A stretch of 64,000 bases of DNA from sequence record PV261924.1; one strand, written 5' to 3'. Both the position numbers and the translations under genes were made by a program. Every line of letters starts with the position of its first letter. Position 1 is the first letter of the stretch. The notes under the pieces are model-generated. The model was not told the DNA's origin. It did no database searches and saw nothing but the letters and a program-made list of their open reading frames with translations. Shown here in pieces: positions 17,376 through 36,415 of the stretch.

Positions 17376-18266
17376 TTACGCACTGGTCATATAAGTAATC
17401 TGTCCAAATATATCAGAGGTATTACTATCTCTATCAGCCACATTAAATTGAATATCTACACCACTATTTCTAACACCTACGACGGTGAGGTGATTAAGAG
17501 TAGAAGTTCTTAAGACTGCATACTCTACAGTACTTGGAAACGAAAAAGCCTCTAATATTACAGAACCTGCTTCATTTCCATTGCTTGGTGTGAAAGGTAA
17601 TCCACCAATTCGTAATAATCCAGTCCCTGCGGAATCTTCGTTTATATTTTTTATATCCACATATAAATGTACTGTATTACCAATTTTAGTATACTTAGCG
17701 TTAGTACTAGTTAAGGTATAAGTACCCGCTGTTGATGCTCCATAATAAGTAGGAGTCCAACTGCCCTCTTCATAATCATCTAGTGCATTATTTACAGATG
17801 TGTCACCGTTGAAAGTAATACCGCCAGTTGATAGGATGCGAAGTTTTTCACTTCCGTCGATTTGAAAATCAATTCTTGTGTCAGCACCAATGTTAGAATG
17901 GTCTGCTCTTATTGATAAATTATCAGCATTACCTCTAAGTTCGTGTCGTACACCAGTCGAATTCCTAACGAGTCTAATACGTGGAGGCTCTCCATAAACG
18001 TCTAGATGAACTGCTGGATTATCTGTCCCGATACCGACATTACCACTTGAATCTACACGAACTCTCTCACCACCATTTGTAAGAATTCTAAACTCATTAT
18101 CACTTGGATTACTAATCGTAGTTCCAGTGCCAATGGTCAAATTATTACCAGTGGTGGCTACATCAGCAGTAATCGTTGTGATACCGTTGATAACCGCACC
18201 ATTAGGAAATGTAGGAGCTCCAGTACCAGCACCATTGACAATGTTATTGGCTCTTATTCTAGACAT
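17376..18266 (-). CDS. tail fibre/adhesin-like protein (DDYEEGSWTP family)
   Basis: GNVGIGTDNP fibre repeats, DGSEKLRI, DDYEEGSWTP C-terminal domain. Confidence 0.7.
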   Translation of the reverse strand: MSRIRANNIVNGAGTGAPTFPNGAVINGITTITADVATTGNNLTIGTGTTISNPSDNEFRILTNGGERVRVDSSGNVGIGTDNPAVHLDVYGEPPRIRLVRNSTGVRHELRGNADNLSIRADHSNIGADTRIDFQIDGSEKLRILSTGGITFNGDTSVNNALDDYEEGSWTPTYYGASTAGTYTLTSTNAKYTKIGNTVHLYVDIKNINEDSAGTGLLRIGGLPFTPSNGNEAGSVILEAFSFPSTVEYAVLRTSTLNHLTVVGVRNSGVDIQFNVADRDSNTSDIFGQITYMTSA

Positions 18267-18285
18267 CTGAAGACTTTTTAGTTAT

Positions 18286-18468
18286 TTATTCTATAATAGG
18301 AAGAGGAGAGGGAGCATCATCTGGTAAAGGTGTGACAACCCCACCATCTTCAACCCATTCAAGATACTCCTGATATTCTGTGTTGTTAGGATCTGGAGGA
18401 ATAGAATATTGTGTACCCACAATACCCACTGTACCATATCCGTCTTGTAAGTAATACTGTTTAGTCAT
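18286..18468 (-). CDS. small fibre-partner protein (YQEYLEWVEDG..PLP), probable assembly chaperone
   Basis: ORF track 18286..18513, start MTKQ; paralogous to 19741 and 33644. Confidence 0.65.
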   Translation of the reverse strand: MTKQYYLQDGYGTVGIVGTQYSIPPDPNNTEYQEYLEWVEDGGVVTPLPDDAPSPLPIIE

Positions 18469-19721
18469 AAGTCTGCCTGAAGAACTACTGCTGCGCCATT
18501 GCCCCAAGTACAATTATTATTTACACTTTGACCACTGTTACTAATTCCTGATATATTAAAAACAACAGTATGATTTATAGATTCTTGCTGAATTGCAACA
18601 GTGGTGGCAGAATACCATGCAACTGTTTCAACCAAACAATTCCCTGCAGTATATGAGAAAATTGTTGGAGTTGCTCTCATGTGAACATCTAAGGGTCTTA
18701 CTACAACCGCAGATGTTCCACCACTCCACTGACCATATGCAATTCTACCACCATTCCAACCCTGACAATATCTATAACATATCTGTAAATCTTCACCATA
18801 AGAACGGTGTTCGAATGGCGTGGCTCTAGTACCTACTTCTAATTGAAGTCCAGTTACATACCACTCATTATCAAGACTGTCAGCAAGATTCATACTTGTT
18901 GTTCTATCACTAGTCAAAGTAGTAGTCCAAACTTCGGCTGGAGTTCCTGCATAATTACTACCTGCTGCTAAATAAAATCTAATAGCTAATCCCTGCCCAT
19001 TATCATTATTAATTGTACCACCAGCAGTGTCTCCAGGAATAGTAATTGTTTTATACTCCCAAGTATCTGCAGAATTTATAGTATATGTTGTTGCATATTG
19101 TTTTTCGGCATCATCTCGATAAAACCACAATCCAAAATCACCAGTTTTATTAGATCTAACCCAGAAAGAGATAGTTAGTGATTTTGCTGTAGAACTACCA
19201 TATTCAAGATGTTGTAAATTTTGTGCTTCAATTACCTGTTGAAGCCAAATTTCTTCAGTTCCTGTTGGTGTTGTTACTGATGTACAATCAAATTTAATAC
19301 TATTTGAAAATCCTTCAGGTGCGGTAGATGATTGTGTTACAGTAAACCCAGCAGGACCTTGAGTAAACTTAAACCTGTCAACACAATACCCATTACTAGT
19401 AAAAGATGTGCCCCTCTGACTGACTTGCATGGCACCATTTTGAATCAAATTACGATTACTTAATGGACCAGCAGTAGGATATTGTAAGTCATTAATGTAT
19501 TCAGTGGTAATATTGGTACTACCAATCGTAACTGAACCCTGACCAACTGTCAGAACTCCAGTGATTCTAGCATCTCCATTTACTGTCAGAGCAGTCTGAC
19601 CAACTCCAGTCACAGTCGTAATACCGAGACTGGAGATACCAACAACATTCACACCCTCAGAGAATGTGGGTGATCCAGTTCCTGCCCTATCAGTATATCT
19701 GTCAGCTCTTACTCTAGACAT
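18465..19721 (-). CDS. tail fibre-like protein with carbohydrate-binding-like domain (PLSNRN...TPFEHRSY family)
   Basis: one of four paralogues sharing these motifs. Confidence 0.7.
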   Translation of the reverse strand: MSRVRADRYTDRAGTGSPTFSEGVNVVGISSLGITTVTGVGQTALTVNGDARITGVLTVGQGSVTIGSTNITTEYINDLQYPTAGPLSNRNLIQNGAMQVSQRGTSFTSNGYCVDRFKFTQGPAGFTVTQSSTAPEGFSNSIKFDCTSVTTPTGTEEIWLQQVIEAQNLQHLEYGSSTAKSLTISFWVRSNKTGDFGLWFYRDDAEKQYATTYTINSADTWEYKTITIPGDTAGGTINNDNGQGLAIRFYLAAGSNYAGTPAEVWTTTLTSDRTTSMNLADSLDNEWYVTGLQLEVGTRATPFEHRSYGEDLQICYRYCQGWNGGRIAYGQWSGGTSAVVVRPLDVHMRATPTIFSYTAGNCLVETVAWYSATTVAIQQESINHTVVFNISGISNSGQSVNNNCTWGNGAAVVLQADL

Positions 19722-19740
19722 TGTGAAACTTTTTAGTTAT

Positions 19741-19905
19741 TTATTCAGAGTCAGCAGGTAATGGTGTGTTACCTTCAGCAACCCATTCTAGATATCTCTG
19801 GTATTCGGAGTTGTTCTCGTCATTCGGAACGTAAAATTTAAAATTATTTCTTTGATAAACAACTCCAATTTGCTCCCCTTGATTGTTATTGTGAATTTTA
19901 TACAT
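19741..19905 (-). CDS. small fibre-partner protein (YQRYLEWVAEGNTPLPADSE)
   Basis: ORF track 19741..19929, start MYKI. Confidence 0.65.
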   Translation of the reverse strand: MYKIHNNNQGEQIGVVYQRNNFKFYVPNDENNSEYQRYLEWVAEGNTPLPADSE

Positions 19906-19947
19906 TAATTGAACTCCTTTAATTGTCAATGTAAATTTTGTACATGA

Positions 19948-21159
19948 TCATAATTCTGCACTAAAATCCATTCTTAAGTCATCATTGTATACTTCGAGCC
20001 ATCCTGCATCTCCTGCAGTATATGTAACAACACTACCTCCAGTACCACTTGTATTGTTATAAAAATCCGACAAGTAAACTATAGAGCAATTTGTTCCGCA
20101 TCTTTGTGTACCAAAAGTAGAACCAGTTTGGTTCCAACTAGCCACTCCAGCAGAAAATACACGGATAAATCCAGGTGTTGATGCAGATATATTATTACTA
20201 AAGACGGGTGTTGATCTCATCGTTACTGGATGATGAACGGCTATATATATCTGGTTACTTTGCCAAATTGATCCAGTTCCGATTCCGTCAGTAGTAGCGT
20301 CAGTACCCAAATGGGTATAAAAATACCTCTGACAGCTGGCCAGTTCATCACCATAAGAACGATGTTCGAAAGGCGTGGCTCTTTCGCCGACTTCTAATTG
20401 AACACCAGTAATTGACCACTCGTTGTCAGTGCTATCTGCTAAATTTGTTTGTCCAGCAAAACGATTTGCGGTAGTTGTTTGCCATGTATTTGATTGAAAT
20501 GTTCCACTTGAAAGGGTTGGTCCAGCAGCAAGACACCATTGGACATATAGACCTACACCATTGTCGTTATTAATAGCGTTTGAAGTGTCTCCAACATAAG
20601 TTAAAGTTTTATATTCCCAGGTGTTTGCTGAATTAATTGTATATTTAATGCCATTAAAAGTAGCAGCATCTCCATGATCTAGTTCAACCACATAATCACC
20701 AGTTTTATTTGATTTAACCCAGAATGAGAGTGTAATTTGTTTTGCGGTAGAACTACCATAGTCAAGATGTACTAAATTTTGAGCTTCAACATACTGACTA
20801 AAAAACAAATTATTTGTTCCTGTCAGAGTAGCTTTTGCAGTAGTGCAATCAACTTTAATACTATTTGAAAATCCAGAAGGCAAATTTGATGTAGTATTTG
20901 CTGTTGTCCAAGTACCACACGATGATATATCTAGTCTAAATCTATCAGCTGCCCAAGACGGACCAGAAGTTACTCCAGAATCTCCTGTGCCTCTCTGCGC
21001 CACCTGCATCGCACCGTTGATAATCAGGTTGCGATTACTTAATGGACCAGCAGTAGGATATTGAAGACCACCAACAGTCACTGAACCATCAGTTGCAATA
21101 CCAATACCACCTGCTGCGGTGGAAGGGTTTTCTATATTGTAAACTCTTAAGGTACTCAT
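19948..21159 (-). CDS. tail fibre-like protein (PLSNRN...TPFEHRSY family)
   Basis: paralogue motifs. Confidence 0.7.
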   Translation of the reverse strand: MSTLRVYNIENPSTAAGGIGIATDGSVTVGGLQYPTAGPLSNRNLIINGAMQVAQRGTGDSGVTSGPSWAADRFRLDISSCGTWTTANTTSNLPSGFSNSIKVDCTTAKATLTGTNNLFFSQYVEAQNLVHLDYGSSTAKQITLSFWVKSNKTGDYVVELDHGDAATFNGIKYTINSANTWEYKTLTYVGDTSNAINNDNGVGLYVQWCLAAGPTLSSGTFQSNTWQTTTANRFAGQTNLADSTDNEWSITGVQLEVGERATPFEHRSYGDELASCQRYFYTHLGTDATTDGIGTGSIWQSNQIYIAVHHPVTMRSTPVFSNNISASTPGFIRVFSAGVASWNQTGSTFGTQRCGTNCSIVYLSDFYNNTSGTGGSVVTYTAGDAGWLEVYNDDLRMDFSAEL

Positions 21160-21161
21160 GG

Positions 21162-21482
21162 TTAGTTTCCTGGTTTAGTAGGCCAAACAGGGTTGGCTGG
21201 ATCAGTAGTGTTTGCAGGAAGATCCCGCAAAGCTTGGCGGTAAGCAGCCATCTCAGCGCTCAGGGTACTGTCAGACAGTGCCAGGTAGTCGGTTTCCGCG
21301 ATAAGGCGGTTACGTTCTTGGCGTAGTTCTTTCCATTGATATTCAATCTCAAGTTCAGCAGCTTTGGCAGCAATAGCAGCCTCGTCAACTGCAATTTTAT
21401 TCCCATCAGAATCAAATGCACCGTAAGTGCTACTAACTCTCACAGCGTTTGGATAAAGAAGATGCGTAGCTTTAATTTTCAT
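21162..21482 (-). CDS. phage tail assembly chaperone-like protein
   Basis: LRQERNRLIAETDY...YRQALRDLP...WPTKP signature. Confidence 0.75.
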   Translation of the reverse strand: MKIKATHLLYPNAVRVSSTYGAFDSDGNKIAVDEAAIAAKAAELEIEYQWKELRQERNRLIAETDYLALSDSTLSAEMAAYRQALRDLPANTTDPANPVWPTKPGN

Positions 21483-22066
21483 CCTGCTACCTCCATTAAT
21501 GTAAAATGAGACATGGGACGACCTATCTTGGCAGCATCGGTATCATTTTCAAACATGTTCACAAAAACTGTTTGAGAAGCGGAACTCATGTGTCTAATCT
21601 TTACTCCGTATGTAAACGTACCCGCACTACCTGGAGTGTCTAGAAACATAATATTGAGGGGTTGACTTGAATCTTGTCGGTCAGGGTCAGAATAACCAAC
21701 AGACGAATACCTAAATCTATTTCCAGCCGCGTCAGCAATACCAATGTCTGTACCATCTCTATTCAATACAAATCCGTAAGACGGAGTGGTTGCCATCATA
21801 TGCATCGTACACATGATTAAAACTTTACTATTTGCTGATACTGTAATGGACTGTTCAATAATATTACTACTGAGTGCCAGAGAGGCAAGATTGTAACTCT
21901 CAGCATCTGTCTTTAGACTTTGAACAACCTGCAAAATGTTCCCAGCACGCTCAAGACGATCAAGAGTTCCACTTGCAGTGGGCATCGTCATTGTAGTGAT
22001 ACCAGCAACAGCTGGTGCACTCAACTCTGTATATCCAGATGTGGCACCATTTAACCTAACTGGCAT
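21479..22066 (-). CDS. short tail fibre-like protein (GNILQVVQ family)
   Basis: N-terminal LNGATSGYTELSAPAVAG..T.T.P module; C-terminal HFTLMEVAG. Confidence 0.65.
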   Translation of the reverse strand: MPVRLNGATSGYTELSAPAVAGITTMTMPTASGTLDRLERAGNILQVVQSLKTDAESYNLASLALSSNIIEQSITVSANSKVLIMCTMHMMATTPSYGFVLNRDGTDIGIADAAGNRFRYSSVGYSDPDRQDSSQPLNIMFLDTPGSAGTFTYGVKIRHMSSASQTVFVNMFENDTDAAKIGRPMSHFTLMEVAG

Positions 22067-22098
22067 TTTAATGAACCTCCATTCTTATTATATATTTA

Positions 22099-22242
22099 TT
22101 AGACCCTGTAACACGCACTGATGAAAACATCTGTAGCACCACTTGTGATGTCTGTAACATCAGTGGAAGAGTCACCAACATTCAGGTCGGTAGGTTGCCC
22201 TATAGCAGTTGAAAAACCTGATAATGTACTTGCTCTAGACAT
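22099..22242 (-). pseudogene. 47-codon chimeric remnant (MSRASTLSGFSTAIGQPTDLNVG + DSSTDVTDITSGATDVFISACYRV)
   Basis: 22173-22242 is identical (70 bp) to 32036-32105; 22233-22265 is identical (33 bp) to 19712-19744. Confidence 0.75.
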
Positions 22243-22281
22243 TGTGAAACTTTTTAGTTATTTATCAGTTGGTCGAATGGT

Positions 22282-22935
22282 TTATGTCTTATAAGTAAGT
22301 TCAAAAAATACATAAGATGAAGCACCAACAGCACTAACATTGGTATTACCATAGTTGGCGCCTGCATTTGCTTTTTGATATACTTGCAATGTAGTACTGT
22401 TACTACCTATATGTGGAGCTACTGGCCACGCATCACCCTGCAATCCAGTCCCATACCAATAAATGAGAGTTCCTACAGTTCTATATCCAGTAGTGTTATT
22501 TGATACATATGGTAATCCTTCAATTGTCCATGCCTGACCAGTAGTTCCTGATGTAGTAGATCCATCCATGGCAAACCAAAGATGAACGGTATCACCAACT
22601 TTTGTATATCTAAATGCTTGATTACCACCAGAGTAACTAATCACATTAGTACCACTTTTGATTACAGGAGTCCAACTACCTTCTTCATAATCATCTAGAA
22701 GTTCAGATGTAGATGACCCTGAACCATCAGATGTGGCAGAGAAGTCAATACCTTGACCATCTAGAAATGCTAAATTACCACTACTATTAAACGTTGCAGC
22801 TACACTACCACCAGTTACAAATTCAATTTCATTTGTGCCAGGTCTGATACCAGTATCTGAATCACCACCTTGAAAACCAGGTGCTGCTGTAGTATTTGTT
22901 CCGCTAATTCTTACAGTCATTATACTACACTCCAA
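22282..22935 (-). CDS. tail fibre-like protein (DDYEEGSWTP family)
   Basis: ORF track; motif present. Confidence 0.7.
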   Translation of the reverse strand: MECSIMTVRISGTNTTAAPGFQGGDSDTGIRPGTNEIEFVTGGSVAATFNSSGNLAFLDGQGIDFSATSDGSGSSTSELLDDYEEGSWTPVIKSGTNVISYSGGNQAFRYTKVGDTVHLWFAMDGSTTSGTTGQAWTIEGLPYVSNNTTGYRTVGTLIYWYGTGLQGDAWPVAPHIGSNSTTLQVYQKANAGANYGNTNVSAVGASSYVFFELTYKT

Positions 22936-23225
22936 ACTGAACCTGAATTGACTGTGACAGTGGCACCAGATGCAACATTAATAGGACCAGCTGTCATGGC
23001 ATTACGCCCTGTGGTGATACTGTAACTGGTAGTCACTGTCAAATCATTCTCATAAAAAATTCTATCAGTACCAGCACCAACTGCACCGACTAAATCACGA
23101 CCATCATACTTAAATGCTGTAGCAGTTACAACACCAGAGACATTGATACCTCCCCCAATCCCAAGAGTGATATTAGGGGAGGAAGCATCTAAATGCTCTA
23201 GGTTATTAGTCTTTAGAATACTCAT
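22920..23225 (-). CDS. small virion/tail protein (FYEND...SAGP.T motif)
   Basis: ORF track; C-terminus similar to that of 27185..27814. Confidence 0.65.
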   Translation of the reverse strand: MSILKTNNLEHLDASSPNITLGIGGGINVSGVVTATAFKYDGRDLVGAVGAGTDRIFYENDLTVTTSYSITTGRNAMTAGPINVASGATVTVNSGSVWSVV

Positions 23226-23248
23226 CTCAATATCTTTTTAGGTATTTA

Positions 23249-23536
23249 TCAGAGTGCGTCTCTGGTAGCAATCAGGTGTGCCTTATATGCATCCTTGACT
23301 GCTTGTGTCCATGCAGCGTTACAAATTGCTTGAACGTCTGCACCTTCACCACTGATGTCTGTATCTACCCAGTTGTCGTCTGCATCAACTGTACCAGACA
23401 TCAGACAATGACGATGGAAAGTACGTGCAATCTCTGTACCATCTCTCTCAACGATATCAGCTCTACGTACTTGAACTGCTTTAAATCTACCGACAACTTC
23501 AATCTTGTCGTTTTCGCTTCTTTCAGAAAGTGCCAT
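23249..23536 (-). CDS. fibre-associated small protein (DKIEVVG...VQVR...FHRH)
   Basis: ORF track; lies next to a DDYEEG-family gene. Confidence 0.7.
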   Translation of the reverse strand: MALSERSENDKIEVVGRFKAVQVRRADIVERDGTEIARTFHRHCLMSGTVDADDNWVDTDISGEGADVQAICNAAWTQAVKDAYKAHLIATRDAL

Positions 23537-23580
23537 TAGGATAATCCTCCGAATTAAACAGGGTTAGGCGTAAGTATTTA

Positions 23581-24525
23581 TTATGCTTCTGTATAATAAT
23601 TAAGTGTAAAAATGATAGAGCCACTACCTGTCATCTCTATTCCTTGTAATGGATCCCAACCCACATTGTCCCCACACTGATAAAATGTCATGTCATTACC
23701 GCCAACATAAGTTACAAGATACGTCTTACTTGCTCCATTATCAAGATTTACATTATTAATCATCGCGGTACCCACAGCTTCAGGAGTGTCACCAACTCCT
23801 TGAGATGCTGCAAATGGAAGTCTAATAGTTATATTTGCCGCAGCCGGGGTGTCTAATCCAGAAATTCTTCCCCATACAGTAACTTTTCTTCCGAGTTTTA
23901 CATATCTAGTGCTACCACTATTAACGCCATTACCACCCGTAGCGAGTGTAGCAGTCCAAGTACCTTGCTCATAATCATCTAAAAGGTGTGCAGATGCTGT
24001 ATCAGAACTACCAGCACCAGTATTCTGAAAATCAATACCTTGATGGTTAATAGTCAGATACTGTGTTGCATCTGTAGAGTCTTGTACTCTGATTGTACCA
24101 CCAACCGCAACATTAACACCTGCAGAAACTGTGGTGGTATTGACACCTACACCACCAGTTGAAGTTATACGAAGTCTTTCTGCGTCTGCAGTTTCATCAT
24201 AAACATTTAAAATTGTACCACTATTTCCTATAGTAAAGGAACGAGCATTAGCACCAGTTTTATCCAATCCTAATCTGGATATCGTTCCATCACTTACTTT
24301 AAGGTTTGTTCCATTAGCAGGAAAAGTTATCGTATTGATACCAACATTACCACTACTATCCTCAACCATTGAGGAATGAGTTACAATACCAGCTGTGGTA
24401 CTGTTCTTATAGAACTGATTAGCACTACCATTCCCATCAGGTAGTGTGATAGTATTATCACCAGCTACAGCTGGAGCGTTGATATCAACGGCTCCAGAAG
24501 TTTGTCCTCGTAAACTCAGTCCCAT
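23581..24525 (-). CDS. tail fibre-like protein (DDYEQGTW family)
   Basis: ORF track; motifs present. Confidence 0.7.
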   Translation of the reverse strand: MGLSLRGQTSGAVDINAPAVAGDNTITLPDGNGSANQFYKNSTTAGIVTHSSMVEDSSGNVGINTITFPANGTNLKVSDGTISRLGLDKTGANARSFTIGNSGTILNVYDETADAERLRITSTGGVGVNTTTVSAGVNVAVGGTIRVQDSTDATQYLTINHQGIDFQNTGAGSSDTASAHLLDDYEQGTWTATLATGGNGVNSGSTRYVKLGRKVTVWGRISGLDTPAAANITIRLPFAASQGVGDTPEAVGTAMINNVNLDNGASKTYLVTYVGGNDMTFYQCGDNVGWDPLQGIEMTGSGSIIFTLNYYTEA

Positions 24526-24549
24526 GGGATTATACTTTTTAGTTATTTA

Positions 24550-25899
24550 TCAGGCAGTTGATGAAGCGGTCAATGAATGCTGTGAACCTGGTACTGCATT
24601 TTGAATAATGACTTCATAGAAGAATGACACACCATCATCACCTGTTGGATTAGAAATATCAATACTATATCCATTTCCGCCAGAATTATTAAATGCATAG
24701 TGACTTGCTGCTGAGTAAGTATATGCAAAAGGTGTGGTTACTGTTGCACTATCAGAGGATGTACCACTGGAGTTTGTAAATACTCTACACATAAACTGTG
24801 CAGCAGGGTGATTGTTTTCTGTGTTAGATGCTGTCCAAGAACCTGTAGCATTGATTGTAATCATTGCACTAGTTCTATCAGTTCCTACAAAAGTAAATCG
24901 AGTCAGTTGTCCAGAATTCAATGTATCTCTGACATAATACTTTTTAATTGCACCACCAGCAATCTCCTCATATCTATAGACTTGGTTTTGTGTAATAGAA
25001 CTATCGCCTAACTGTAAAGTGGAACCAGTTGATACATTGATGTTACCACCTGCTGTGATACGAAGTTTTTCTGATCCATCAACTTTAAATCTAATATGGC
25101 TATCGGGACCCTGATTACCCTCATCAGCAGCAATCACTAATTCATCTGCATCACCATCTATTCCAATAAAATTATTTCTTAAAAAACCAGATTTACTAAT
25201 TGTTATTCGTGATTGGGCGTTTGTAGTTGTATCAATATGAAGACCAGTTTGTGGATCATCTGTCCCGATGCCAACATAACCATTTGAATTAACTCTAAGA
25301 GCCTCAGTTCCACCAGCAGATATTGCAACTTGACCAGCAGCAGGGAAGAATACCCCAGTAGTTGTATCAACACCAACTAAACCAGGTGTTGCTTCTGTAC
25401 CATAACCAACTGATACTGCTGCACCAACAGGAACTGCAAGACCATAAGGGAACTTAGGTGCCTTTACACCACTCTTATCTGTAATATTATCTACTCTTAC
25501 TTTACCTTCACCACTAGCAAGAATACCAGGAGTATCTACATCTGTACCAATACCTAAAATGTCAGGAATAAAGTCATCACCATCGGCTACAATCAGGTCT
25601 GCATCACCTTGTAGGACAATGTTGGTATATTGTGTATATGCTGCTGAAGCAGATGCTGGTGGGTCTACAGTGATGGTAGAACCAATGGTCAGGTTTGCAT
25701 CAGTATAATATATCTTATTCAACGGACTGTTTAGGTCATCTGGTAACAATGAAGTACCAAGGCCACCAGGAGTACCAGTCAGGTTTGAGCCGTCACCATA
25801 GTATTCAATTGCAGTTACTACCCCCAACCTGACATTAACAGGATTTTGAGGGTTAGTAACCGCAGAACCAAAACCAGCAAGATTACGAGCTCTTGACAT
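24550..25899 (-). CDS. tail fibre-like protein, 449 aa
   Basis: GYVGIGTDDP, DGSEKLRI repeats. Confidence 0.7.
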   Translation of the reverse strand: MSRARNLAGFGSAVTNPQNPVNVRLGVVTAIEYYGDGSNLTGTPGGLGTSLLPDDLNSPLNKIYYTDANLTIGSTITVDPPASASAAYTQYTNIVLQGDADLIVADGDDFIPDILGIGTDVDTPGILASGEGKVRVDNITDKSGVKAPKFPYGLAVPVGAAVSVGYGTEATPGLVGVDTTTGVFFPAAGQVAISAGGTEALRVNSNGYVGIGTDDPQTGLHIDTTTNAQSRITISKSGFLRNNFIGIDGDADELVIAADEGNQGPDSHIRFKVDGSEKLRITAGGNINVSTGSTLQLGDSSITQNQVYRYEEIAGGAIKKYYVRDTLNSGQLTRFTFVGTDRTSAMITINATGSWTASNTENNHPAAQFMCRVFTNSSGTSSDSATVTTPFAYTYSAASHYAFNNSGGNGYSIDISNPTGDDGVSFFYEVIIQNAVPGSQHSLTASSTA

Positions 25900-25922
25900 T
25901 TTTTATACTTTTTAGTTATTTA

Positions 25923-27173
25923 TCAGAGACCTGCATCGGTCAAACGTTGCTCAAGGGTTTCAATTTTTGCAATAGCTTCTTGAAGAGCAGCTGTAAGAAG
26001 TGGTACGACGTAAGATTTATCAACCATTTGCGGATTAATAGAGCCATCTTCGTTCACTGCATCTTTTTCACCACCAACTGCATAAGGACAAACTTCGTCA
26101 AGTTCGTGGGCAAGAAAACCAACCTGCGGTACTGTGGGATTTTCAATGAATCTGTAATTAACTGGATTTAATCTCTTAACATCAGAAATTGCATTTGTAA
26201 GTGGTGTAATGTTTTCCTTTAGTCGGTAATCAGAACTGGTGGCCCAAAGCATATTACCATTATTATACCAAGCTTTGCCACGTTGGGTGCCTTGTTGTTG
26301 GCAGTCAATAAAGTATGCGTTCCCAGATGCTGTCTCTGTGTGATTCAAACTCATGATCCAGTCATTTTGACCTGTCTCAAACCACACCAAACAGTCGTTT
26401 GTTCCCTGACCACCACCGTTTCTAATTACTTGAAGACACTCAGCCTGACGGTCACCTAAATCATCTCCAATATGAACTTTACCGTCACGTTCAATTCTCA
26501 TCCCCTCTTGAGGGGCGCTTGCATTGTCAGCAGTTGTCCAAAACGAGATGCGACCTGGATAGTCTAGATTAGATTCTGTTCCATCATTCTCACCCTTAAT
26601 TTGAGCAAAAATGCCACCATTATAATCGGTAAAACTAATAGTACCTAAAGTGTCTCCTGCACCAATAGAACCAGCTGTAGTATTATGATTAAGTCTCAAA
26701 TAACTACCATTTCCATCATCAGTTAAAAGACCTCTCAGCACATTGTTTGTATAAAATGTTAAATTCTCTGACTCATATCCTACAAATCCAAGAGCGTTAT
26801 TATCATTTACAAGTTTTAAATAAACAGAATTTGATCCCGATTTTGTAAATTCAGCAACAGTTGTACTCCCCGCAACACCCTTTACGTCAAGAGTTACACT
26901 AGGAATCTCAGTTCCAATACCAACTCTGCCGTTGCTGTCGAGGCGTAAACGTTCAATGGAGTTAGTATATAAACTTAATTCATTATTAGCAGGGTTACCA
27001 ATAGATGCTCCTGTACCAATTACCACACCTTGTCTGGCAGTAATGACACCAACAGAATCTACATTGGTAACATCTTCATATGTGACTGTACCACCTACAG
27101 ATACACTCTGGTCAAAGGAATAACTTGTAGTTGCGCCAGTAATTGCACCGTCGCCTGAAATTGAAATTGGCAT
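25923..27173 (-). CDS. tail fibre with C-terminal intramolecular chaperone (peptidase S74-like)
   Basis: TSSDYRLKENI...GFLAHEL...coiled-coil C-terminus. Confidence 0.85.
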   Translation of the reverse strand: MPISISGDGAITGATTSYSFDQSVSVGGTVTYEDVTNVDSVGVITARQGVVIGTGASIGNPANNELSLYTNSIERLRLDSNGRVGIGTEIPSVTLDVKGVAGSTTVAEFTKSGSNSVYLKLVNDNNALGFVGYESENLTFYTNNVLRGLLTDDGNGSYLRLNHNTTAGSIGAGDTLGTISFTDYNGGIFAQIKGENDGTESNLDYPGRISFWTTADNASAPQEGMRIERDGKVHIGDDLGDRQAECLQVIRNGGGQGTNDCLVWFETGQNDWIMSLNHTETASGNAYFIDCQQQGTQRGKAWYNNGNMLWATSSDYRLKENITPLTNAISDVKRLNPVNYRFIENPTVPQVGFLAHELDEVCPYAVGGEKDAVNEDGSINPQMVDKSYVVPLLTAALQEAIAKIETLEQRLTDAGL

Positions 27174-27184
27174 TTACTTACTCC

Positions 27185-27814
27185 TTACAGAATGACCCAT
27201 CTTTCAGAACCAGGGATAGTCACTGTAACCCCAGCTGATACTGAAACAGGACCAACACTGACCGCACTGTATCCTGATGTTAATTGATAATTGGTTGTCA
27301 CAACTCTCTGGTTCTCTTGGAAGACTTTATCAGGTCCACCACCTCTTGCACCACCAGAGATTGCAATATCAATAGAACCATCACCCTTCAATGTAACTGT
27401 ATTACCAGCACCAGTGAAGTTCAGTGTGGATGTAACACCAATGGTTGTACCACCTGATTGAATACCAACTTCACCAATACCATCAACACTTGCATAAAGT
27501 GTTCCAGTGACTACCAGGTCACCACTGATAGTCTGTGATGATGCTGAACCTACAATGGCATCAGGAACAGCAAAGGTATCAAGAACCTCAATCGAGATTT
27601 CATCACCTGATTGACAAGCATCATTCAGTGTGACAGTAGAACCATCAGCTGCTGTGTAGTCAGTGGAATTCGTCAGGCGAACACCATTTCTAAACAGAGA
27701 CAGTTTGCCGAGGGTATAACCATCAGTGACTGTAAATAAAGTCTGTCCTGCAGTTGCGGAAAACCTTAGTACTCTATAATTGTTTTGACTGGATATAGGA
27801 TTTCCAATGGCCAT
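27185..27814 (-). CDS. tail/baseplate-associated protein, 209 aa
   Basis: ATAGQTLF...LFRNGVRL...DYTA.DG module typical of T4-like cyanophage tail proteins. Confidence 0.7.
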   Translation of the reverse strand: MAIGNPISSQNNYRVLRFSATAGQTLFTVTDGYTLGKLSLFRNGVRLTNSTDYTAADGSTVTLNDACQSGDEISIEVLDTFAVPDAIVGSASSQTISGDLVVTGTLYASVDGIGEVGIQSGGTTIGVTSTLNFTGAGNTVTLKGDGSIDIAISGGARGGGPDKVFQENQRVVTTNYQLTSGYSAVSVGPVSVSAGVTVTIPGSERWVIL

Positions 27815-27837
27815 TGTAAAACCTTTTTAGTTATTTA

Positions 27838-30800
27838 TTATTTAGCGTTGGCAGTCTTGAATGGTGATTCAGCGAAGGCAGCGAAGATGTAAGTTGCTCC
27901 ACTATTATTTCCACCAAATCCCGATGCTTGTCTTACCTTAAAACCATTGGATAAGAAATCTACATCATGAGCATTATCAGTTTCCCTATCATTGGTATTT
28001 GCGAATAATACTGCAGTGATTGGGTTTATTGTTTTTCTTGAATTATCAAAAATATACCAATTTGTTGCAAGTGTTGAAGACTTAATCATAACCCATGCCG
28101 GTTTAAACCCACAATACACAAAAGGTCCATCAGTACTTGCATTACCAATATAACTTCCAAACTTACTGTAACCTTCTATTTCTGTCCAGCAGTAAGCAAC
28201 AATGTCCTGATTACCCGTACCTGCTGCCTGACCAGTTGTTGTGGAATTTGCAAGACCAAAAGTGTCACTTCCTACAGAAGGCCAGAAAACATATGCTGCT
28301 TCAGAACTGTTTAAAGTGACGGAATTTTTACCAGCATCATTAATACCAGAATGATAAACTCTCCAGTTGACAGCAGCACTTCTATTTTTCAGGATAATCA
28401 TATTTGGAGTCTTATTTAAACCATGCCCAACTGTTTCTGTTGCAGTATTGCTTCCAGTTGAAGTATATGTTACAATACTAACCCCAGCATCCTGATTTAC
28501 AGAAACTACAGAATCAATTGTTCCATCTGTGTTTACTGATGTGGTGCCTGCTCCTACTTTCCAACACCAGGCGACAAAGTTAGTTCCAGATTCATTAATA
28601 CCAATATTACTACCACCAGTTCCATAAACCATACTAAAACCATCATTATTAAACGAACTTATGCCTCCAAAATAATCACTAGAAGCACCTTCTACTGCTG
28701 ATGAATTGGGCAATAAGAAATTATCTTTTCCAGCACCACGAACAGAATCAAAGGCACGATGATTATATGCGGAAGGACTTCTTGACTTAATCCAAACCAA
28801 GTCAGGAGTAAATCCAACACCTACAATACTTCTACCACTATTACCATCACCAGTCCAAAGCACAGTCTTAAAGTAATCACCAGGATCAGAAATCGCAGGA
28901 GTTGGTAAGTTGTCCTCACATAATGCTAGGAATCCACTTGGAGGTTGATATCTAAATTCACCTTTTCCATTGGAATCAGCATTTCTTTGTGTTGATGCTG
29001 CTGAAACTTGACCAGAGAATGTTGGGTTTTGACCAAAGTTCCAATTGACCGTGGTTTGAGTACCACCTGACTCTCTGTAAGAAAATCTATAATCTCTCTC
29101 TGGAGTAGTGGAGATACCAGTAGCCATTGCGGTTCCACTAGTATCAACTACTTCATTTTTTGCAATCCAAACACTTCCAATGTCTGCGTCATATGCAATA
29201 GCAAGAATGTCACCAGTACTAAATGCACTTAAATTACCATTGTCTGTACCACTGGTAGCAACTGTACCATCCCACATTTGAACACTTACATTGTTAGTTC
29301 CAACTGTCGCCGCGTCGTGGTCTGCATCACTTACAAGTATATTGCCTCTGGCTTGTTGGTCAACATCTCTTACCTCAACATACCATTTTCCAGAGGTAAA
29401 TCCAAATGTTGAGAACACATGTTTATCATTGGCGGTAGTTCCTGATACCTGTAAATTTCCTCTTGTCAGGGTTCCAGCTACAGCATTAGCTAATGGATTC
29501 AAAGTCGCAAAGTTATTTGCAGTACAATCAGATACTGCTCTCCAGGTTGCAATACCTACGGGTGTATAAGGTTTCGGAACATCAAAACCACCCTTGTATT
29601 TTGCTACACCTTTATAAACACGGAGGTCTTGTATATCACCAGTAAATTCGTCATTACTTGTGCCGTCCCAAGTTCCTATTTTAAATGTATCAGCAGTATT
29701 TGTATATAAAGTAGTTGGGGCATTTGTTAATATACCTACCACCACTCCATTTAGATATACTCTTAAATCATTTCCTTCTTTTTCTCCAACTACATGTGAC
29801 CATTGGTTAGTTGTCAAAATACTAACTGGTGAACTTACAACATGTTGAGTCGCAGCTGTTCCATCACCAGATACGATAAAATTAAGATCACCACTTGAAC
29901 CGTGATAAAGTAACCAACTTCTTCTATCAACACCATCGTAATTAAAAATTCCAGCAATTCCACCACCATCAGTTAAACTTGTGGGATTTATCCAAGCCTC
30001 TACCGTATAGTCATCAGATCCTGGTTGGAAGTCTGGATCATTGGCGGGTGATGTAAGATAGTCACCAGTCCCATCAAAGGTCATAGCACTTCCATAATAA
30101 TTCCCAAGTTCATAACCCACACCAGCGTCACCAACTGCTGTAAGTGTCTTATTAGTTCCACTACCTTTGATATCAGCAGAGTAATCTCTTGGTGCGTCTT
30201 CTTGTTTGACTACAACGTTGTCAAATATAGCAGTCGCAATTTCATTTGCATTTACTCTCAAAATAACATATAATGTTGTGGATGTTGCAGTAAATGAAAT
30301 ATATCTATTTCCATATCCACTATTTGATGGTCGCGCCGCAAAACTTGCTAAAGGATTGTTAGAATAACTCAAATAATATGCAATACTTGATGCGGTTCCA
30401 CCAACAAGATCAACACCTACAGTATATCTTTTACCAACTTCTACTGTTACTAACTGATATGCATATACTGGAGGATCACTAGTATCAGTATTACTTACTA
30501 CTAATTGACCCCCGACAACGGCCATAGAACCTTCGGTAACATCATTAATAGTCCAACCAGTAGTTCCATTATCAAAAGATCCATTAGTAACTAAATTAGC
30601 ACCAGTCGCAGTGGAAATACCAGGAACAGCAAGAACCAAATTAGCAGCATAAGAGTCACTTCTCAACTGACTGACATATGCATCAGAAGTTGTAGGAGCA
30701 CCATTACGTGGTTGTGGTAGGTCTTCTCCTTTCAGAGTGATAATACTGTTAGGAGTGGTGTGGAAGTCAGCACCGAAGTTGGAACTATCATTTATAGGAA

Positions 30801-31485
30801 GATAGAAACCATTGACACCAAATCCACCATTATTGTTGATAGAATTCTTAATTACTGATGGTTTCTTTGGAACCCATTGTCCTGGTCTGAAATCAGTGGA
30901 TTGTGTAGTGCCAGCAGAGACATATCCATTACCATCTTTATAGAAACCAAACACATCTGGTGTGAGTGCTTGACCGTCTACAAAAAACCAATCAAAATAT
31001 TCTTGTGATGGACCAGATGGAGCATATGGAACACCACCAACTATAACAGTACCAATGGTATGCATCACTTGTGTATTTACAGAACCATCATAGTTCAGAC
31101 TAGGATAACTACCAGTTAGACTATCTTGTAATGTACCATTTACATATAATTTTAATCTTTCTTGAGCAACACTTTTGGTAACATCCCATTTAAGTAATAT
31201 ATGCATCCAACTTCCAACATCCCTAAACACATTTGTAGTGTTTAATTCATGATCTACACCACCTTGATTTCTACCAAGTTGTATTGTTCCATCACCATTA
31301 AAATTTGCAACAGACTGATATGGTGATGAATCTTGTGTTGTATAAAAATTGAAAAAAGCACCAGAAGTATTATCTGGATTTTGATTTGCTGCTACAGCAT
31401 TCCTTTTAATCCAAAAAGATAAGGTCCAAGTATGTCTGTTGCCAGTGCTTGTAGGAGTTCTATGAAAATATTCGTTTACAGCCAT
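27838..31485 (-). CDS. large multi-domain adhesin (LamG/ConA-like, CBM-like and SPRY-like domains)
   Basis: WTLSFWIKR, NLVTNGSFD, YTVEAWINP...WSHVV, GKWYVEV, PDLVWIKSR motifs. Confidence 0.75.
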   Translation of the reverse strand: MAVNEYFHRTPTSTGNRHTWTLSFWIKRNAVAANQNPDNTSGAFFNFYTTQDSSPYQSVANFNGDGTIQLGRNQGGVDHELNTTNVFRDVGSWMHILLKWDVTKSVAQERLKLYVNGTLQDSLTGSYPSLNYDGSVNTQVMHTIGTVIVGGVPYAPSGPSQEYFDWFFVDGQALTPDVFGFYKDGNGYVSAGTTQSTDFRPGQWVPKKPSVIKNSINNNGGFGVNGFYLPINDSSNFGADFHTTPNSIITLKGEDLPQPRNGAPTTSDAYVSQLRSDSYAANLVLAVPGISTATGANLVTNGSFDNGTTGWTINDVTEGSMAVVGGQLVVSNTDTSDPPVYAYQLVTVEVGKRYTVGVDLVGGTASSIAYYLSYSNNPLASFAARPSNSGYGNRYISFTATSTTLYVILRVNANEIATAIFDNVVVKQEDAPRDYSADIKGSGTNKTLTAVGDAGVGYELGNYYGSAMTFDGTGDYLTSPANDPDFQPGSDDYTVEAWINPTSLTDGGGIAGIFNYDGVDRRSWLLYHGSSGDLNFIVSGDGTAATQHVVSSPVSILTTNQWSHVVGEKEGNDLRVYLNGVVVGILTNAPTTLYTNTADTFKIGTWDGTSNDEFTGDIQDLRVYKGVAKYKGGFDVPKPYTPVGIATWRAVSDCTANNFATLNPLANAVAGTLTRGNLQVSGTTANDKHVFSTFGFTSGKWYVEVRDVDQQARGNILVSDADHDAATVGTNNVSVQMWDGTVATSGTDNGNLSAFSTGDILAIAYDADIGSVWIAKNEVVDTSGTAMATGISTTPERDYRFSYRESGGTQTTVNWNFGQNPTFSGQVSAASTQRNADSNGKGEFRYQPPSGFLALCEDNLPTPAISDPGDYFKTVLWTGDGNSGRSIVGVGFTPDLVWIKSRSPSAYNHRAFDSVRGAGKDNFLLPNSSAVEGASSDYFGGISSFNNDGFSMVYGTGGSNIGINESGTNFVAWCWKVGAGTTSVNTDGTIDSVVSVNQDAGVSIVTYTSTGSNTATETVGHGLNKTPNMIILKNRSAAVNWRVYHSGINDAGKNSVTLNSSEAAYVFWPSVGSDTFGLANSTTTGQAAGTGNQDIVAYCWTEIEGYSKFGSYIGNASTDGPFVYCGFKPAWVMIKSSTLATNWYIFDNSRKTINPITAVLFANTNDRETDNAHDVDFLSNGFKVRQASGFGGNNSGATYIFAAFAESPFKTANAK

Positions 31486-31496
31486 TATGCTTTACC

Positions 31497-32105
31497 TCAA
31501 CCTAAAATTACTGAACCTGATGGGAAGTAATCAGTGATGATTTCTACCCAGTTTGTACCGTCGTATATCTCTAACGCCTTACTTGTACTATTGAATCTAA
31601 TGAAACCCTCCACACCTGTGGGTCTCTGTGCTGTTGTACCCTTTGGAAGTCCAATAGCATCAGTGTTCTGTGAAACATCAAGACTGACTTCAGGTCCAGT
31701 GCTTCCAATACCTACCGAACTACCTGCACCAGTGACATGAATACCACCACGCGTGGTGATGATACCAAGAGAATCAACGTTGGTGACATCCTCATAAGTC
31801 AGTGTACCAGCAACTGATACATTACCTAAAAGAGTTCTGGTGTCTACACTGAGGAATGTACCAACACCAAGTGGACTATGAATACCACTTGAACTGATGG
31901 TGGTAACACCGACTAATGTGGAACCAATACTTACAGTGTCACTGAATGTTGCGATACCAGTGATACTTAAGTTGTTGAATTCATAAGTATTTGATGCTGT
32001 GATGTTATCAGCGTCAATACGAGTTGCGGTAACCACACCAACATTCAGGTCGGTAGGTTGCCCTATAGCAGTTGAAAAACCTGATAATGTACTTGCTCTA
32101 GACAT
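31497..32105 (-). CDS. tail fibre-like protein, 202 aa
   Basis: YEDVTNVDS module; C-terminal LPKGTTAQRP...G.IRFNST...EIYDGTNW. Confidence 0.7.
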   Translation of the reverse strand: MSRASTLSGFSTAIGQPTDLNVGVVTATRIDADNITASNTYEFNNLSITGIATFSDTVSIGSTLVGVTTISSSGIHSPLGVGTFLSVDTRTLLGNVSVAGTLTYEDVTNVDSLGIITTRGGIHVTGAGSSVGIGSTGPEVSLDVSQNTDAIGLPKGTTAQRPTGVEGFIRFNSTSKALEIYDGTNWVEIITDYFPSGSVILG

Positions 32106-32126
32106 CTTGGTGTGTTTTTAGTTATT

Positions 32127-32187
32127 TATTCAGAGTCAACAGGTATGGTTAGTTGCTTTCAACTGCCAGTTTGGAGTTGCCTCCAGA
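32127..32187 (-). pseudogene. eroded remnant of a YLEWV..PLPADSE partner gene
   Basis: GAA AGC AAC TAA CCA TA- CCT GTT GAC TCT GAA TAA aligns with GAA GGT AAC ACA CCA TTA CCT GCT GAC TCT GAA TAA of 19741..19905. Confidence 0.6.
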
Positions 32188-33621: not shown

Positions 33622-33643
33622 ATCACGTAAACTTTTTAGTTAT

Positions 33644-33811
33644 TTATTCAGAGTCAGTAGGTAATGGTGTGTTACCTTCTTCAACCCATTCAAGGTATTT
33701 TTGGTAGTCAGTATTGGCAGTATCAAGTGGAATAGTTCCGATACCTTGTCCATCGATTGCAATCAACTTTTTTGTAAAAAAATCGTAAATTCCAGTGTAA
33801 ATCATAGTCAT
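33644..33811 (-). CDS. small fibre-partner protein (YQKYLEWVEEGNTPLPTDSE)
   Basis: ORF track 33644..33829; ATGA coupling at 33811. Confidence 0.65.
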   Translation of the reverse strand: MTMIYTGIYDFFTKKLIAIDGQGIGTIPLDTANTDYQKYLEWVEEGNTPLPTDSE

Positions 33812-35205
33812 AACTCCGCAGAAATCCAAATGTCTTCTGTTGTAAAACCAAACAAAAACGACGTTCCTAGGTTATTGTTTGCATTGTTCGTATTTTTGTA
33901 GTTTGGATTTAAAATGTGGGTAGAGGAGCCGCTAGTAACAATAAAATTAAGTTCTGCGTTTGTTTCACCTCCATAATTTACATTTAGCATACCTGTTGAG
34001 ATTGTAGCTGATCCATCACTAGCTCTTGTTGTAGGTGCAGCCCTCATTCTTGAAATAACTATAGATCCTTCTAACCGTGCATCTGAGTATACTACACCAT
34101 TTGCACTTCTCGTGACCGATACGCCATTAGGCAGCATTTGGAAATAGCGCATACACTTTTGAAGATCATCCCCATAGCTCCGACGTTCAAATGGTGTACT
34201 TTTAGTTCCTACTTCTACCTGCAATCCAGTAACATAAAAGTCATTATTAAGCGTATCTGACCAAGTATTAGTCATGCCAGGTGTTCCAAATAAGTTTGAA
34301 TTATGCCAAGTGTTTGCTGTACCATGAAAAGTAGTACCAACATCAATACCCATCAGTATTTCTAGACCTTTCCCGTTTGTACTTTCAAAAGTTCCTGAAT
34401 CTGCCCCAGGGATTGTAAAAGTTTTATACTCCCAAGTATTTGCAGCTTGAATTGAATACTCTCCAGTGTAGTTTTTAGTGGCTGTGTTGTTTCTAAAACA
34501 AAAACCATAAGTGCCAGCAACACTAGATTTTACCCAAAAAGAAACGGCTACTGTTTTACAATTTGCGTTTCCATATTCAAGCTGATTTATATCATATCCT
34601 TCAAAAGAATATCCAAGAAGCACGTAGCCAAAAGCAGGTGTTCCTGCAGCGTTAGCGCTGACTCTCAATTTATATGAATATTGAAATCCTTGGCCTGCAG
34701 GTACATCCGTGTCTTGTGATTGATCAACGCTAAAAGTATTAAAAGTGCTGGAGTACGTTTTAAATCTGTCAATTAAGTATTCCCCGTCAACGGTTACAGT
34801 TACTGGTCCTGCTCCTCTTTGTGCTATTGCCATCGCACCGTTGTGGACCAAATTACGATTACTTAATGGACCAGTAGTAGGAAAACCTAAGTCATTAATA
34901 CTATCAACACCATAGACAGAACCAATACCTGCTGTGGATACACCAGTGATACTTGAACTACCTGATGTTCCATCAATAGTAACTGAACCAGTACCAATTG
35001 TTAGAATACCAGTGATTCTTGCATCACCACCAACGACCAACTCTGTTGTGGCACCACCAACTACTGTATTACTAAATGTTGATACCCCAGTTACAGATAA
35101 ACCACTACCAACATGTAAGTCACTTGAAATGGTAGTCACACCCGTCAGCACTGGTCCGTGAGAACCAGTCCTACCTGTAATAGAATTTACATTAATTGCT
35201 GACAT
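33808..35205 (-). CDS. tail fibre-like protein (PLSNRN...TPFERRSY family)
   Basis: paralogue motifs. Confidence 0.7.
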   Translation of the reverse strand: MSAINVNSITGRTGSHGPVLTGVTTISSDLHVGSGLSVTGVSTFSNTVVGGATTELVVGGDARITGILTIGTGSVTIDGTSGSSSITGVSTAGIGSVYGVDSINDLGFPTTGPLSNRNLVHNGAMAIAQRGAGPVTVTVDGEYLIDRFKTYSSTFNTFSVDQSQDTDVPAGQGFQYSYKLRVSANAAGTPAFGYVLLGYSFEGYDINQLEYGNANCKTVAVSFWVKSSVAGTYGFCFRNNTATKNYTGEYSIQAANTWEYKTFTIPGADSGTFESTNGKGLEILMGIDVGTTFHGTANTWHNSNLFGTPGMTNTWSDTLNNDFYVTGLQVEVGTKSTPFERRSYGDDLQKCMRYFQMLPNGVSVTRSANGVVYSDARLEGSIVISRMRAAPTTRASDGSATISTGMLNVNYGGETNAELNFIVTSGSSTHILNPNYKNTNNANNNLGTSFLFGFTTEDIWISAEL

Positions 35206-35230
35206 TGTTTATATCTTTTAAAGGTATTTA

Positions 35231-35863
35231 TCAGAGGTCACCCAACTGATATAAATCAGTCACGAGTGTTTTACCAAGACCAACAGTAATTGTAGCACCA
35301 GTGCTGACAATCATTCTTGGTTCCTGGACTACAACATATGTATTATCTGCACCTGCATTTGTCGTATTCAGGTCAATTGTCTCATTGACATAGACAGTTG
35401 CATTGATGTAACTAAATGGACTTTCTGTGTTACTAGGATAACGAATAGCAGTACCAACACCACCACCAGCACCACTGACTTCTACGTTAATGGTGTCACC
35501 AGATTGTGAGAATGTAGTTGCAGTGCCAACAAAGTTAAGTGTATTTGCTTCACCTACAGATACACCATTGGAGTGAATACCAATGGTGGCTTGTGCTGCA
35601 TTGAATGCTTTATATGTAACAGCCTCGATAATGTCACCAGGCTGTGGATGTGTAATGAATGAGAAGTTATTACCATCACCAGCAGTGAAGTCAATACCTC
35701 TAATCTGTTTTGCACCGTTCAGATAGACATCAAAATACTGAAGATCGTATCCTGATGCAAAGTTATAGGTAGTTTGAATACCTGTGGGTTGATAGACCTG
35801 ACGTGAAACAGTTACCGCTGAGTCACTAGGAGATCTTCCGATGTAACCGTTATTTCCAATCAT
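35231..35863 (-). CDS. tail/baseplate-associated protein, 210 aa
   Basis: GYIGR...VYLNG.KQ...DFTA.DG module. Confidence 0.7.
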   Translation of the reverse strand: MIGNNGYIGRSPSDSAVTVSRQVYQPTGIQTTYNFASGYDLQYFDVYLNGAKQIRGIDFTAGDGNNFSFITHPQPGDIIEAVTYKAFNAAQATIGIHSNGVSVGEANTLNFVGTATTFSQSGDTINVEVSGAGGGVGTAIRYPSNTESPFSYINATVYVNETIDLNTTNAGADNTYVVVQEPRMIVSTGATITVGLGKTLVTDLYQLGDL

Positions 35864-36390: not shown

Positions 36391-36415
36391 TGTATTAATA
36401 CTTTTTAGTTATTTA

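What the first reader, a model, noticed from the sequence alone, without database searches (positions are those of the whole stretch)
22099..22265. Three-way chimeric mini-gene: a recombination scar
This 47-codon ORF has a promoter/leader identical (33 bp) to that of gene 18465..19721 and a first 70 bp identical to gene 31497..32105, located 10 kb away. It then jumps to a tail (DSSTDVTDITSGATDVFISACYRV) resembling the last strands of DDYEEG-family fibres. Perfect identity implies a recent event and is direct evidence that the cassettes exchange heads and collapse by deletion.
Basis: seen in the sequence. Interest (0 to 1): 0.65.

Follow-up and report, generated by a model that had tools for sequence, protein, structure and literature searches.

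The report
Leftover scar of a tail-fibre swap
This 47-codon gene in a marine cyanophage is debris from a swap of a tail-fibre tip: the incoming DNA carried the start of a neighbouring fibre gene and fused it to the last 24 codons of the old tip. It is a clear but ordinary example of how phages reshuffle their host-recognition genes.

Summary
The window is the first 64 kb of Synechococcus phage RN05-S, a T4-like cyanomyovirus. The mini-ORF (22099..22242, minus strand) shares 70 exact nt with the start of gene 31497..32105. It shares 33 exact nt of promoter and leader with gene 18465..19721.

The tail now has a parent. Metagenome contig L014 carries an intact version of the upstream fibre gene (22282..22935, "gene A"). 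That version ends ...DVFISACYRV and runs straight into the same promoter and next gene. So the tail is the old C-terminus of gene A, not the end of a separate collapsed gene.

Sister phages RB11-B and S-B05 lack the mini-gene. Six genomes or contigs carry five different C-domains at this locus, between conserved flanks.

Best reading: one replacement event.
- The left crossover lay in the conserved 5' part of gene A (about 22770 or higher).
- The right crossover was illegitimate, at a 7-9 nt microhomology (22173-22181).
- The incoming DNA brought a new C-domain, a late promoter and 23 codons of the donor's next gene.

The perfect identity says little about how recent the event was, because gene 31497 is 98.7% identical among the sister phages. 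This is a known kind of event, well documented here, and of modest interest. I could not check raw reads of the isolate.

The parts
22099..22242 (-). Mini-ORF of 47 codons plus a TAA stop. GenBank annotates it as hypothetical protein XYR95538.1 of phage RN05-S.
22243..22266 (-). Late-promoter word and leader. GATAAATA (22266-22259) fits the cyanomyovirus late promoter NATAAATA. The leader GTTTCACA is identical to that of gene 18465..19721.
   Evidence: motif as described in PMC2984593
22173..22242 (-). First 70 nt (23 codons) of a 31497-type fibre gene, 100% identical to 32036-32105. This is a passenger piece of the donor's downstream gene.
22173..22181 (-). Junction microhomology ATGTTGGTG. 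Seven nt are exact and 8 of 9 are shared with the resident-type allele in L014. Closer metagenome relatives match the window up to exactly 22181.
22099..22172 (-). Stump of the displaced C-domain of gene A: the last 24 codons plus the stop, still in frame. In the L014 model this corresponds to a loop plus the final 10-residue beta-strand.
22067..22100 (-). Conserved late promoter and leader of the next gene (21479..22066). It is identical in RB11-B, S-B05 and L010, and near-identical in L012 and L014. This is the right-hand conserved flank of the variable locus.
22282..22769 (-). Incoming segment: the new C-terminal (DDYEEG head) domain of gene A with its stop. The sister phages lack it, and its nearest relatives are only about 53% identical.
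22770..22920 (-). Conserved 5' part of gene A, shared with all relatives. The left, homologous crossover lies somewhere here.
31497..32105 (-). Intact 202-aa fibre gene whose first 70 nt are repeated in the mini-ORF.
18465..19744 (-). Intact 418-aa fibre gene whose promoter and leader (19712-19744) are repeated in the mini-ORF.

Best explanation
The mini-ORF is a by-product of one replacement of the C-terminal domain of tail-fibre gene A (22282..22935). That domain is probably receptor-binding. The ancestor of RN05-S carried an L014-type allele of gene A ending ...NVGDSSTDVTDITSGATDVFISACYRV, directly followed by the late promoter of gene 21479..22066. During a mixed infection, DNA from a related phage recombined in. 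The left crossover was homologous, in the conserved 5' part of gene A. The right crossover was illegitimate, at a 7-9 nt microhomology (ATGTTGGTG). That microhomology is shared by codons 21-23 of the donor's next gene (a 31497-type fibre gene with an 18465-type leader) and a site 74 nt before the stop of the resident gene. The imported block held a new C-domain with its stop, an intergenic late promoter, and 70 nt of the next gene. It landed in frame on the last 24 codons of the old domain. Shown: the three identities, the absence from sister phages, the intact parent of the tail in the same genomic context, the hypervariable locus between conserved flanks, and the microhomology. Inferred: that it was a single event, the direction of transfer, the identity of the donor, and that the 47-aa product (probably transcribed late from its intact promoter) has no function of its own.
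For: The window is RN05-S with identical coordinates. RB11-B and S-B05 have only 53 and 61 nt between gene A and the next gene, and no mini-gene. Contig L014 has gene A's N-part, then a DDYEEG domain ending DVFISACYRV, a stop, and the same promoter and start of the next gene. Its local alignment to the window spans exactly 22181..21924, 243/258 identical. Metagenome contigs X3 rec20 and X2 rec12 share those boundaries with fewer differences, and X3 rec20 runs on into unlike sequence at both ends. There are five C-domain alleles in six genomes or contigs between conserved flanks. RN05-S-specific differences begin at 22769. In S-B05 a DDYEEG-type gene sits directly upstream of the 31497 orthologue, so a donor-type gene order exists in nature. 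The invariant Tyr and the final strand of the family are retained in the tail. The tail occurs only once in the RN05-S genome.
Against: No near-identical donor was found. The new C-domain has relatives of at most 53% identity. The combination of the GTTTCACA leader with the 31497-type start was not found in IMG/VR. Raw reads of the isolate were not available. The metagenome contigs seen cover each part but do not bridge the two junctions specific to the mini-gene. A two-step history cannot be excluded.
Confidence: 0.7

Rival explanations
1. Two-step history. A complete second fibre gene (31497-type head plus L014-type DDYEEG body) once lay between gene A and gene 21479..22066. It later collapsed by an in-frame internal deletion at the same microhomology.
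For: IMG/VR relatives L006-L008 carry two DDYEEG-type genes in tandem in this region, so extra genes do occur here. Microhomology at the junction fits a deletion as well as a direct join.
Against: This history needs an extra event and an intermediate that was never seen. In L014 and in the X3 contig the tail belongs to gene A itself, in the same context. Sister phages show no trace of a second gene.
Confidence: 0.15
2. Assembly artefact or mixed lysate: the junctions were created by mis-joining at repeats.
For: The region contains 33-nt and 70-nt repeats. No raw reads of the isolate could be laid, and the listed metagenome contigs break at the repeats.
Against: The right junction rests on only 9 nt of shared sequence, too short to mislead an assembler. 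For two direct repeat copies in a linear genome, only one path uses all unique segments. The tail and the 16 nt at 22266-22281 are unique in the genome. A 70-nt repeat is shorter than usual reads. Contigs from three runs (two studies) match 22236 to 22566-22799 with no differences.
Confidence: 0.05
3. A functional small gene. The 47-aa chimera is kept because it acts in the phage, for example by competing with the 202-aa fibre for its docking site. Alternatively, its promoter boosts the downstream genes.
For: It has an intact NATAAATA-type promoter and the same initiation region as two real genes. The frame is open and annotated.
Against: It is found only in RN05-S. An in-frame join has a 1-in-3 chance, and 24 open codons are not unusual. 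It has no Pfam or PHROG family. It keeps only one strand of a beta-sandwich domain.
Confidence: 0.08

Closest known systems
Modular exchange of adhesin and tail-fibre C-terminal domains in T4-type phages (gp37/gp38 locus; Trojet et al. 2011, PMC3157838; earlier work by Tetart, Krisch and Sandmeier recalled from memory)
   Same: Variable host-recognition modules are swapped by recombination between conserved flanking sequences. Closely related phages differ mainly in these modules.
   Different: These are cyanomyovirus fibre genes of an unrelated family (DDYEEG head). One crossover was illegitimate and left a visible, still open, promoter-bearing gene fragment that records the donor's gene order.
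PeSL mobile regulatory cassettes of T4-type phages (Arbiol et al. 2010, PMC2839356; Comeau et al. 2014, PMC4122927)
   Same: Short repeated regulatory words between genes mark the borders of shuffled modules. Here the 15-nt word ATAAATAACTAAAAA occurs 9 times, on one strand only.
   Different: PeSLs are early sigma-70-type promoters with a stem-loop terminator, found in hyperplastic regions of non-essential genes. Here the word is a late promoter, no terminator-like site was found, and the crossovers mapped lie inside coding sequence, not in the promoter word.
Gene remnants left by illegitimate, microhomology-mediated recombination in phage genome mosaics (general knowledge from phage comparative genomics, e.g. 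Hendrix and Hatfull; from memory)
   Same: A novel joint at a few shared bases creates a truncated or chimeric ORF beside an acquired module.
   Different: Both parents of the joint can be shown here, and the join happens to be in frame with an intact promoter.
Trimeric head domains of viral attachment proteins (Det7 tailspike gp208 6f7d, reovirus sigma1, Listeria phage PSA gp15)
   Same: The L014-type DDYEEG domain is modelled as a beta-sandwich whose best Foldseek matches are such heads (E 1e-4, TM about 0.5).
   Different: The fold match is weak, and no function was tested. The mini-ORF keeps only the final strand, so it is not such a domain.

Membership tests
Recombination scar of a tail-fibre module exchange | Flanks are colinear with close relatives that lack the extra segment | tested here: met
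   RB11-B and S-B05 have 53 and 61 nt where RN05-S has 215 nt. The promoter and next gene are identical.
Recombination scar of a tail-fibre module exchange | Each piece of the chimera can be traced to an intact parent sequence | tested here: met
   The 70 nt match gene 31497. The 33 nt match the 18465 leader. The tail matches the C-terminus of L014 gene A in the same context.
Recombination scar of a tail-fibre module exchange | A near-identical donor of the imported block is identified | tested here: not met
   GenBank phages, IMG/VR and the word search give only relatives of 53% identity or less for the new C-domain. The leader-plus-head combination is not in IMG/VR.
Recombination scar of a tail-fibre module exchange | Microhomology at the novel joint | tested here: met
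   ATGTTGG is exact, and 8 of 9 nt are shared between the donor type and L014. Closer metagenome relatives align up to 22181.
Recombination scar of a tail-fibre module exchange | The joint is supported by reads of the isolate | not testable with these tools
   Only Logan contigs of metagenomes were available, and the ones listed break at the repeats.
T4-type late promoter (NATAAATA) of cyanomyoviruses | The motif lies upstream of the start at the same spacing as for bona fide late structural genes | tested here: met
   GATAAATA lies at 22266-22259. The same 15-nt word and spacing precede eight other genes in this fibre region, one of them with an identical leader. The motif is described in PMC2984593.
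T4-type late promoter (NATAAATA) of cyanomyoviruses | Late transcription starts there | not testable with these tools
   No RNA data were available for this phage.
DDYEEG-family fibre head domain | The DDYEEG motif and the full beta-sandwich body are present | tested here: not met
   The mini-ORF keeps only the last 24 residues, a loop plus the final strand. It is a fragment, not a member.
PeSL regulatory cassette | A sigma-70-type early promoter followed by a stem-loop terminator | tested here: not met
   No terminator-like site was found, and sigma-70-like sites do not exceed shuffled controls in 21800-22500.

The most novel reading that the evidence does not exclude
The chimeric 47-aa peptide is made late in infection from its intact promoter and has gained a role. 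It might, for example, occupy the docking site of the 202-aa fibre (same first 23 residues) and so tune which fibres the virion carries. That would be a new gene born from a recombination scar.
Probability: 0.07. Interest if true: 0.55.

Novelty: new member of a known kind. Interest (0 to 1): 0.3.

Why it matters
Swapping of host-recognition modules is thought to drive host-range change in phages, but the joints are usually erased. Here one exchange left both parents of its illegitimate joint visible. It shows that the swap used one homologous crossover and one crossover at a 7-9 nt microhomology. It also records that the donor had a different gene order. The scar adds an extra late promoter and a possibly expressed peptide. 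This is useful as a worked example for cyanophage fibre evolution and for annotation: XYR95538.1 is a gene remnant. It does not change what is known in principle.

Tried and rejected
- Searches for the tail outside RN05-S mostly came back blank: blastn and tblastn against GenBank phages, an exact and a degenerate pattern in IMG/VR, a degenerate pattern in JGI metagenomes, and the word search with the 47-aa protein, which found only a 31497-type N-terminal fragment.
- The parent of the tail was found only indirectly, through the neighbouring 195-aa gene.
- The exact-protein look-up of the 195-aa protein found nothing on record.
- No whole genome is held for this window.
- The donor search for the new C-domain gave no near-identical hit.
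- Pfam gave nothing for any fibre protein here.
- No paper on RN05-S or RB11-B was found.
- I rejected "three independent events" as a necessary reading. The leader-plus-head combination may simply be the donor's own allele.
- I rejected recency inferred from the 70/70 identity.
- The "endosialidase" label in the record has no support from Pfam or PHROGs.

Full report
**What the window is.** Megablast places the window on Synechococcus phage RN05-S (PV261924.1, host Synechococcus sp. MW02) with identical coordinates. The mini-ORF is annotated there as hypothetical protein XYR95538.1. Its relatives RB11-B, S-B05 and S-B43 are T4-like cyanomyoviruses (Kyanoviridae). All genes of the region lie on the minus strand, in a long run of fibre-like genes.

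**Check of the observation.**
- Exact identity runs over 70 nt (22173-22242 = 32036-32105) and over 33 nt (22233-22265 = 19712-19744).
- The two identities overlap in ATGTCTAGAG.
- The 8-nt leader GTTTCACA is the leader of the 18465 orthologues in all three sister phages. The 31497 orthologues all have CACACCAAG. The 5' end is therefore really a mosaic of two paralogue types.
- The 15-nt word ATAAATAACTAAAAA occurs nine times in the window, all on the minus strand between 18.2 and 36.4 kb.
- That word contains the NATAAATA late-promoter motif described for cyanomyoviruses (PMC2984593).

**Relatives.** RB11-B and S-B05 have no mini-gene. Between the homologue of gene A (22282..22935) and the homologue of gene 21479..22066 they have 53 and 61 nt, where RN05-S has 215 nt. 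From the stop codon of the mini-ORF onward, all three phages are identical across the promoter and start of the next gene. Upstream, gene A is conserved in its first third. From about the DDYEEG motif onward it is unrelated in sequence in each phage.

**Origin of the tail.** Direct searches for the tail failed. Searching metagenomes with the neighbouring 195-aa protein gave contig L014 (BCSF01009637.1).
- L014 carries a 5'-open gene whose N-part is gene A (NEIEFVTGGSVAATFNSSGNL...).
- It has a DDYEEG domain that ends ...DDVGDSATNVLDITDGSTDVFISACYRV.
- A stop follows, then the same promoter and the same first 143 nt of the next gene.
- The local alignment of L014 to the window runs from 22181 to 21924, 243/258 identical.
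- Logan contigs of marine metagenomes have the same boundaries. X3 record 20 covers 21924-22181 with 8 differences, in a 550-nt contig that continues with unlike sequence on both sides. X2 record 12 covers 22070-22181.

The tail is therefore the last 24 codons of an older allele of gene A at this very locus. It was not the end of a separate gene. In a family alignment the tail keeps the invariant tyrosine. In an AlphaFold model of the L014 protein (mean pLDDT 76, last block 91), the tail corresponds to a loop plus the final ten-residue strand. The best fold matches of that model are head domains of viral attachment proteins, with weak scores.

**The joints.**
- Right joint: the donor type reads CTGAATGTTGGTG|TGGTT, the resident type (L014) reads GATGATGTTGGCG|ACTCT, and the mini-ORF reads CTGAATGTTGGTG|ACTCT. 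That is 7 exact nt and 8 of 9 shared. The closer metagenome relatives match the window through all nine (22173-22181).
- Left side: L014 is identical to RN05-S from 22834 to 22770. All relatives differ from RN05-S at 22769, 22763, 22758 and 22757, and heavily beyond 22735.
- The imported block is therefore about 22173-22769. It holds a new C-domain with its stop, 16 unique nt, a late promoter with leader, and 70 nt of the donor's next gene.

**Most likely mechanism.** A single replacement fits best: one homologous crossover in the conserved 5' part of gene A, and one illegitimate crossover at the microhomology. The join happened to be in frame.
- A donor-type gene order exists in nature. In S-B05 the 31497 orthologue is directly preceded by a 333-aa DDYEEG-type gene.
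- That S-B05 gene shares its first 77 residues (94%) with the 477-aa gene of RN05-S and then has a different body. So bodies are exchanged under constant heads.
- Six genomes or contigs show five C-domain alleles at the gene A locus.
- The next gene is itself mosaic after about 150 nt.

**What is not shown.**
- The donor was not found. The new C-domain has no relative in GenBank phages or IMG/VR. The word search gave relatives of at most 53% identity, attached to various N-parts. The leader-plus-head combination is not in IMG/VR.
- Recency is not shown by the 70/70 identity. Gene 31497 differs at 8 of 609 nt from each sister phage, and none of those differences lies in the first 143 nt.
- Raw reads of the isolate were not available. 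The metagenome contigs listed cover the parts but break at the 33-nt repeat, as a 31-mer graph must, so they do not bridge the joints specific to the mini-gene.
- Contigs from three runs of two studies match from 22236 up to between 22566 and 22799 without a difference. So the new C-domain with its promoter circulates in nature.
- An assembly artefact is unlikely on logic. Nine shared bases cannot mislead an assembler. The tail and the segment 22266-22281 are unique in the genome. With two direct repeat copies, only one linear path uses all segments.

**Function.** The mini-ORF has the same promoter word, leader and initiation region as genes that are surely expressed, so it is probably transcribed late and may be translated. 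That is inference. It has no family, is seen in one phage only, and keeps one strand of a beta-sandwich domain. I read it as a neutral remnant. A role of its own, or a promoter effect on the downstream genes, remains possible at low odds.

**Comparison with known systems.** Module exchange in tail-fibre and adhesin genes of T4-type phages is well known (PMC3157838). Repeated regulatory words at module borders are known as PeSLs (PMC2839356, PMC4122927). This case differs from PeSLs: the promoter is of the late type, no terminator-like site is present, and the crossovers lie within coding sequence.

**Verdict.** This is a new, well-resolved member of a known kind of event.

Noticed in passing
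window 32106-32187 (-): The stretch upstream of gene 31497..32105 is a decayed copy of the 3' end of the small-ORF family (19741..19929, 33640..33829; ...WVAEGNTPLPADSE). It has a 1-nt deletion and stop codons. It is present in RB11-B too, whereas S-B05 has a DDYEEG-type gene there instead. This is a second, older scar.
   Followed up: partly
window 21479-22066 (-) and L014, L012, L003: The 195-aa fibre-like gene is itself mosaic. Its first ~143-150 nt are conserved in all relatives. The rest is only 40-45% identical at protein level in L012, L013 and L014, and the S-B05 copy likewise diverges after the first ~150 nt.
   Followed up: partly
window 32188-33621 (-) versus S-B05 L004:1598-2596: The same 77-residue N-terminal head (94% identical) is joined to a carbohydrate-binding-type body in RN05-S and to a DDYEEG-type body in S-B05.
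   Followed up: yes
window 18275-36416 (-): The 15-nt word ATAAATAACTAAAAA occurs nine times, always on the minus strand and always just upstream of a fibre-gene start. Many of these genes also begin ATGTCTAGAG or similar, which gives short recombination targets.
   Followed up: partly
window 22282-22920, 17376-18266, 23581-24525 (-): The GenBank label 'endosialidase' for the DDYEEG-family genes has no support from Pfam (no hit) or PHROGs (tail fibre or unknown). The modelled fold resembles head domains of viral attachment proteins.
   Followed up: partly
L006-L008 (IMG/VR contigs): More distant relatives carry two DDYEEG-type genes in tandem plus the 87-aa gene between the T7-like fibre piece and the 195-aa gene. 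Gene content of this region varies as well as domain content.
   Followed up: no
window 22100: The stop codon of the old gene A allele is TGA in L014 and in all four metagenome runs, but TAA in RN05-S. The same base lies inside the NATAAATA word of the next gene's promoter.
   Followed up: no
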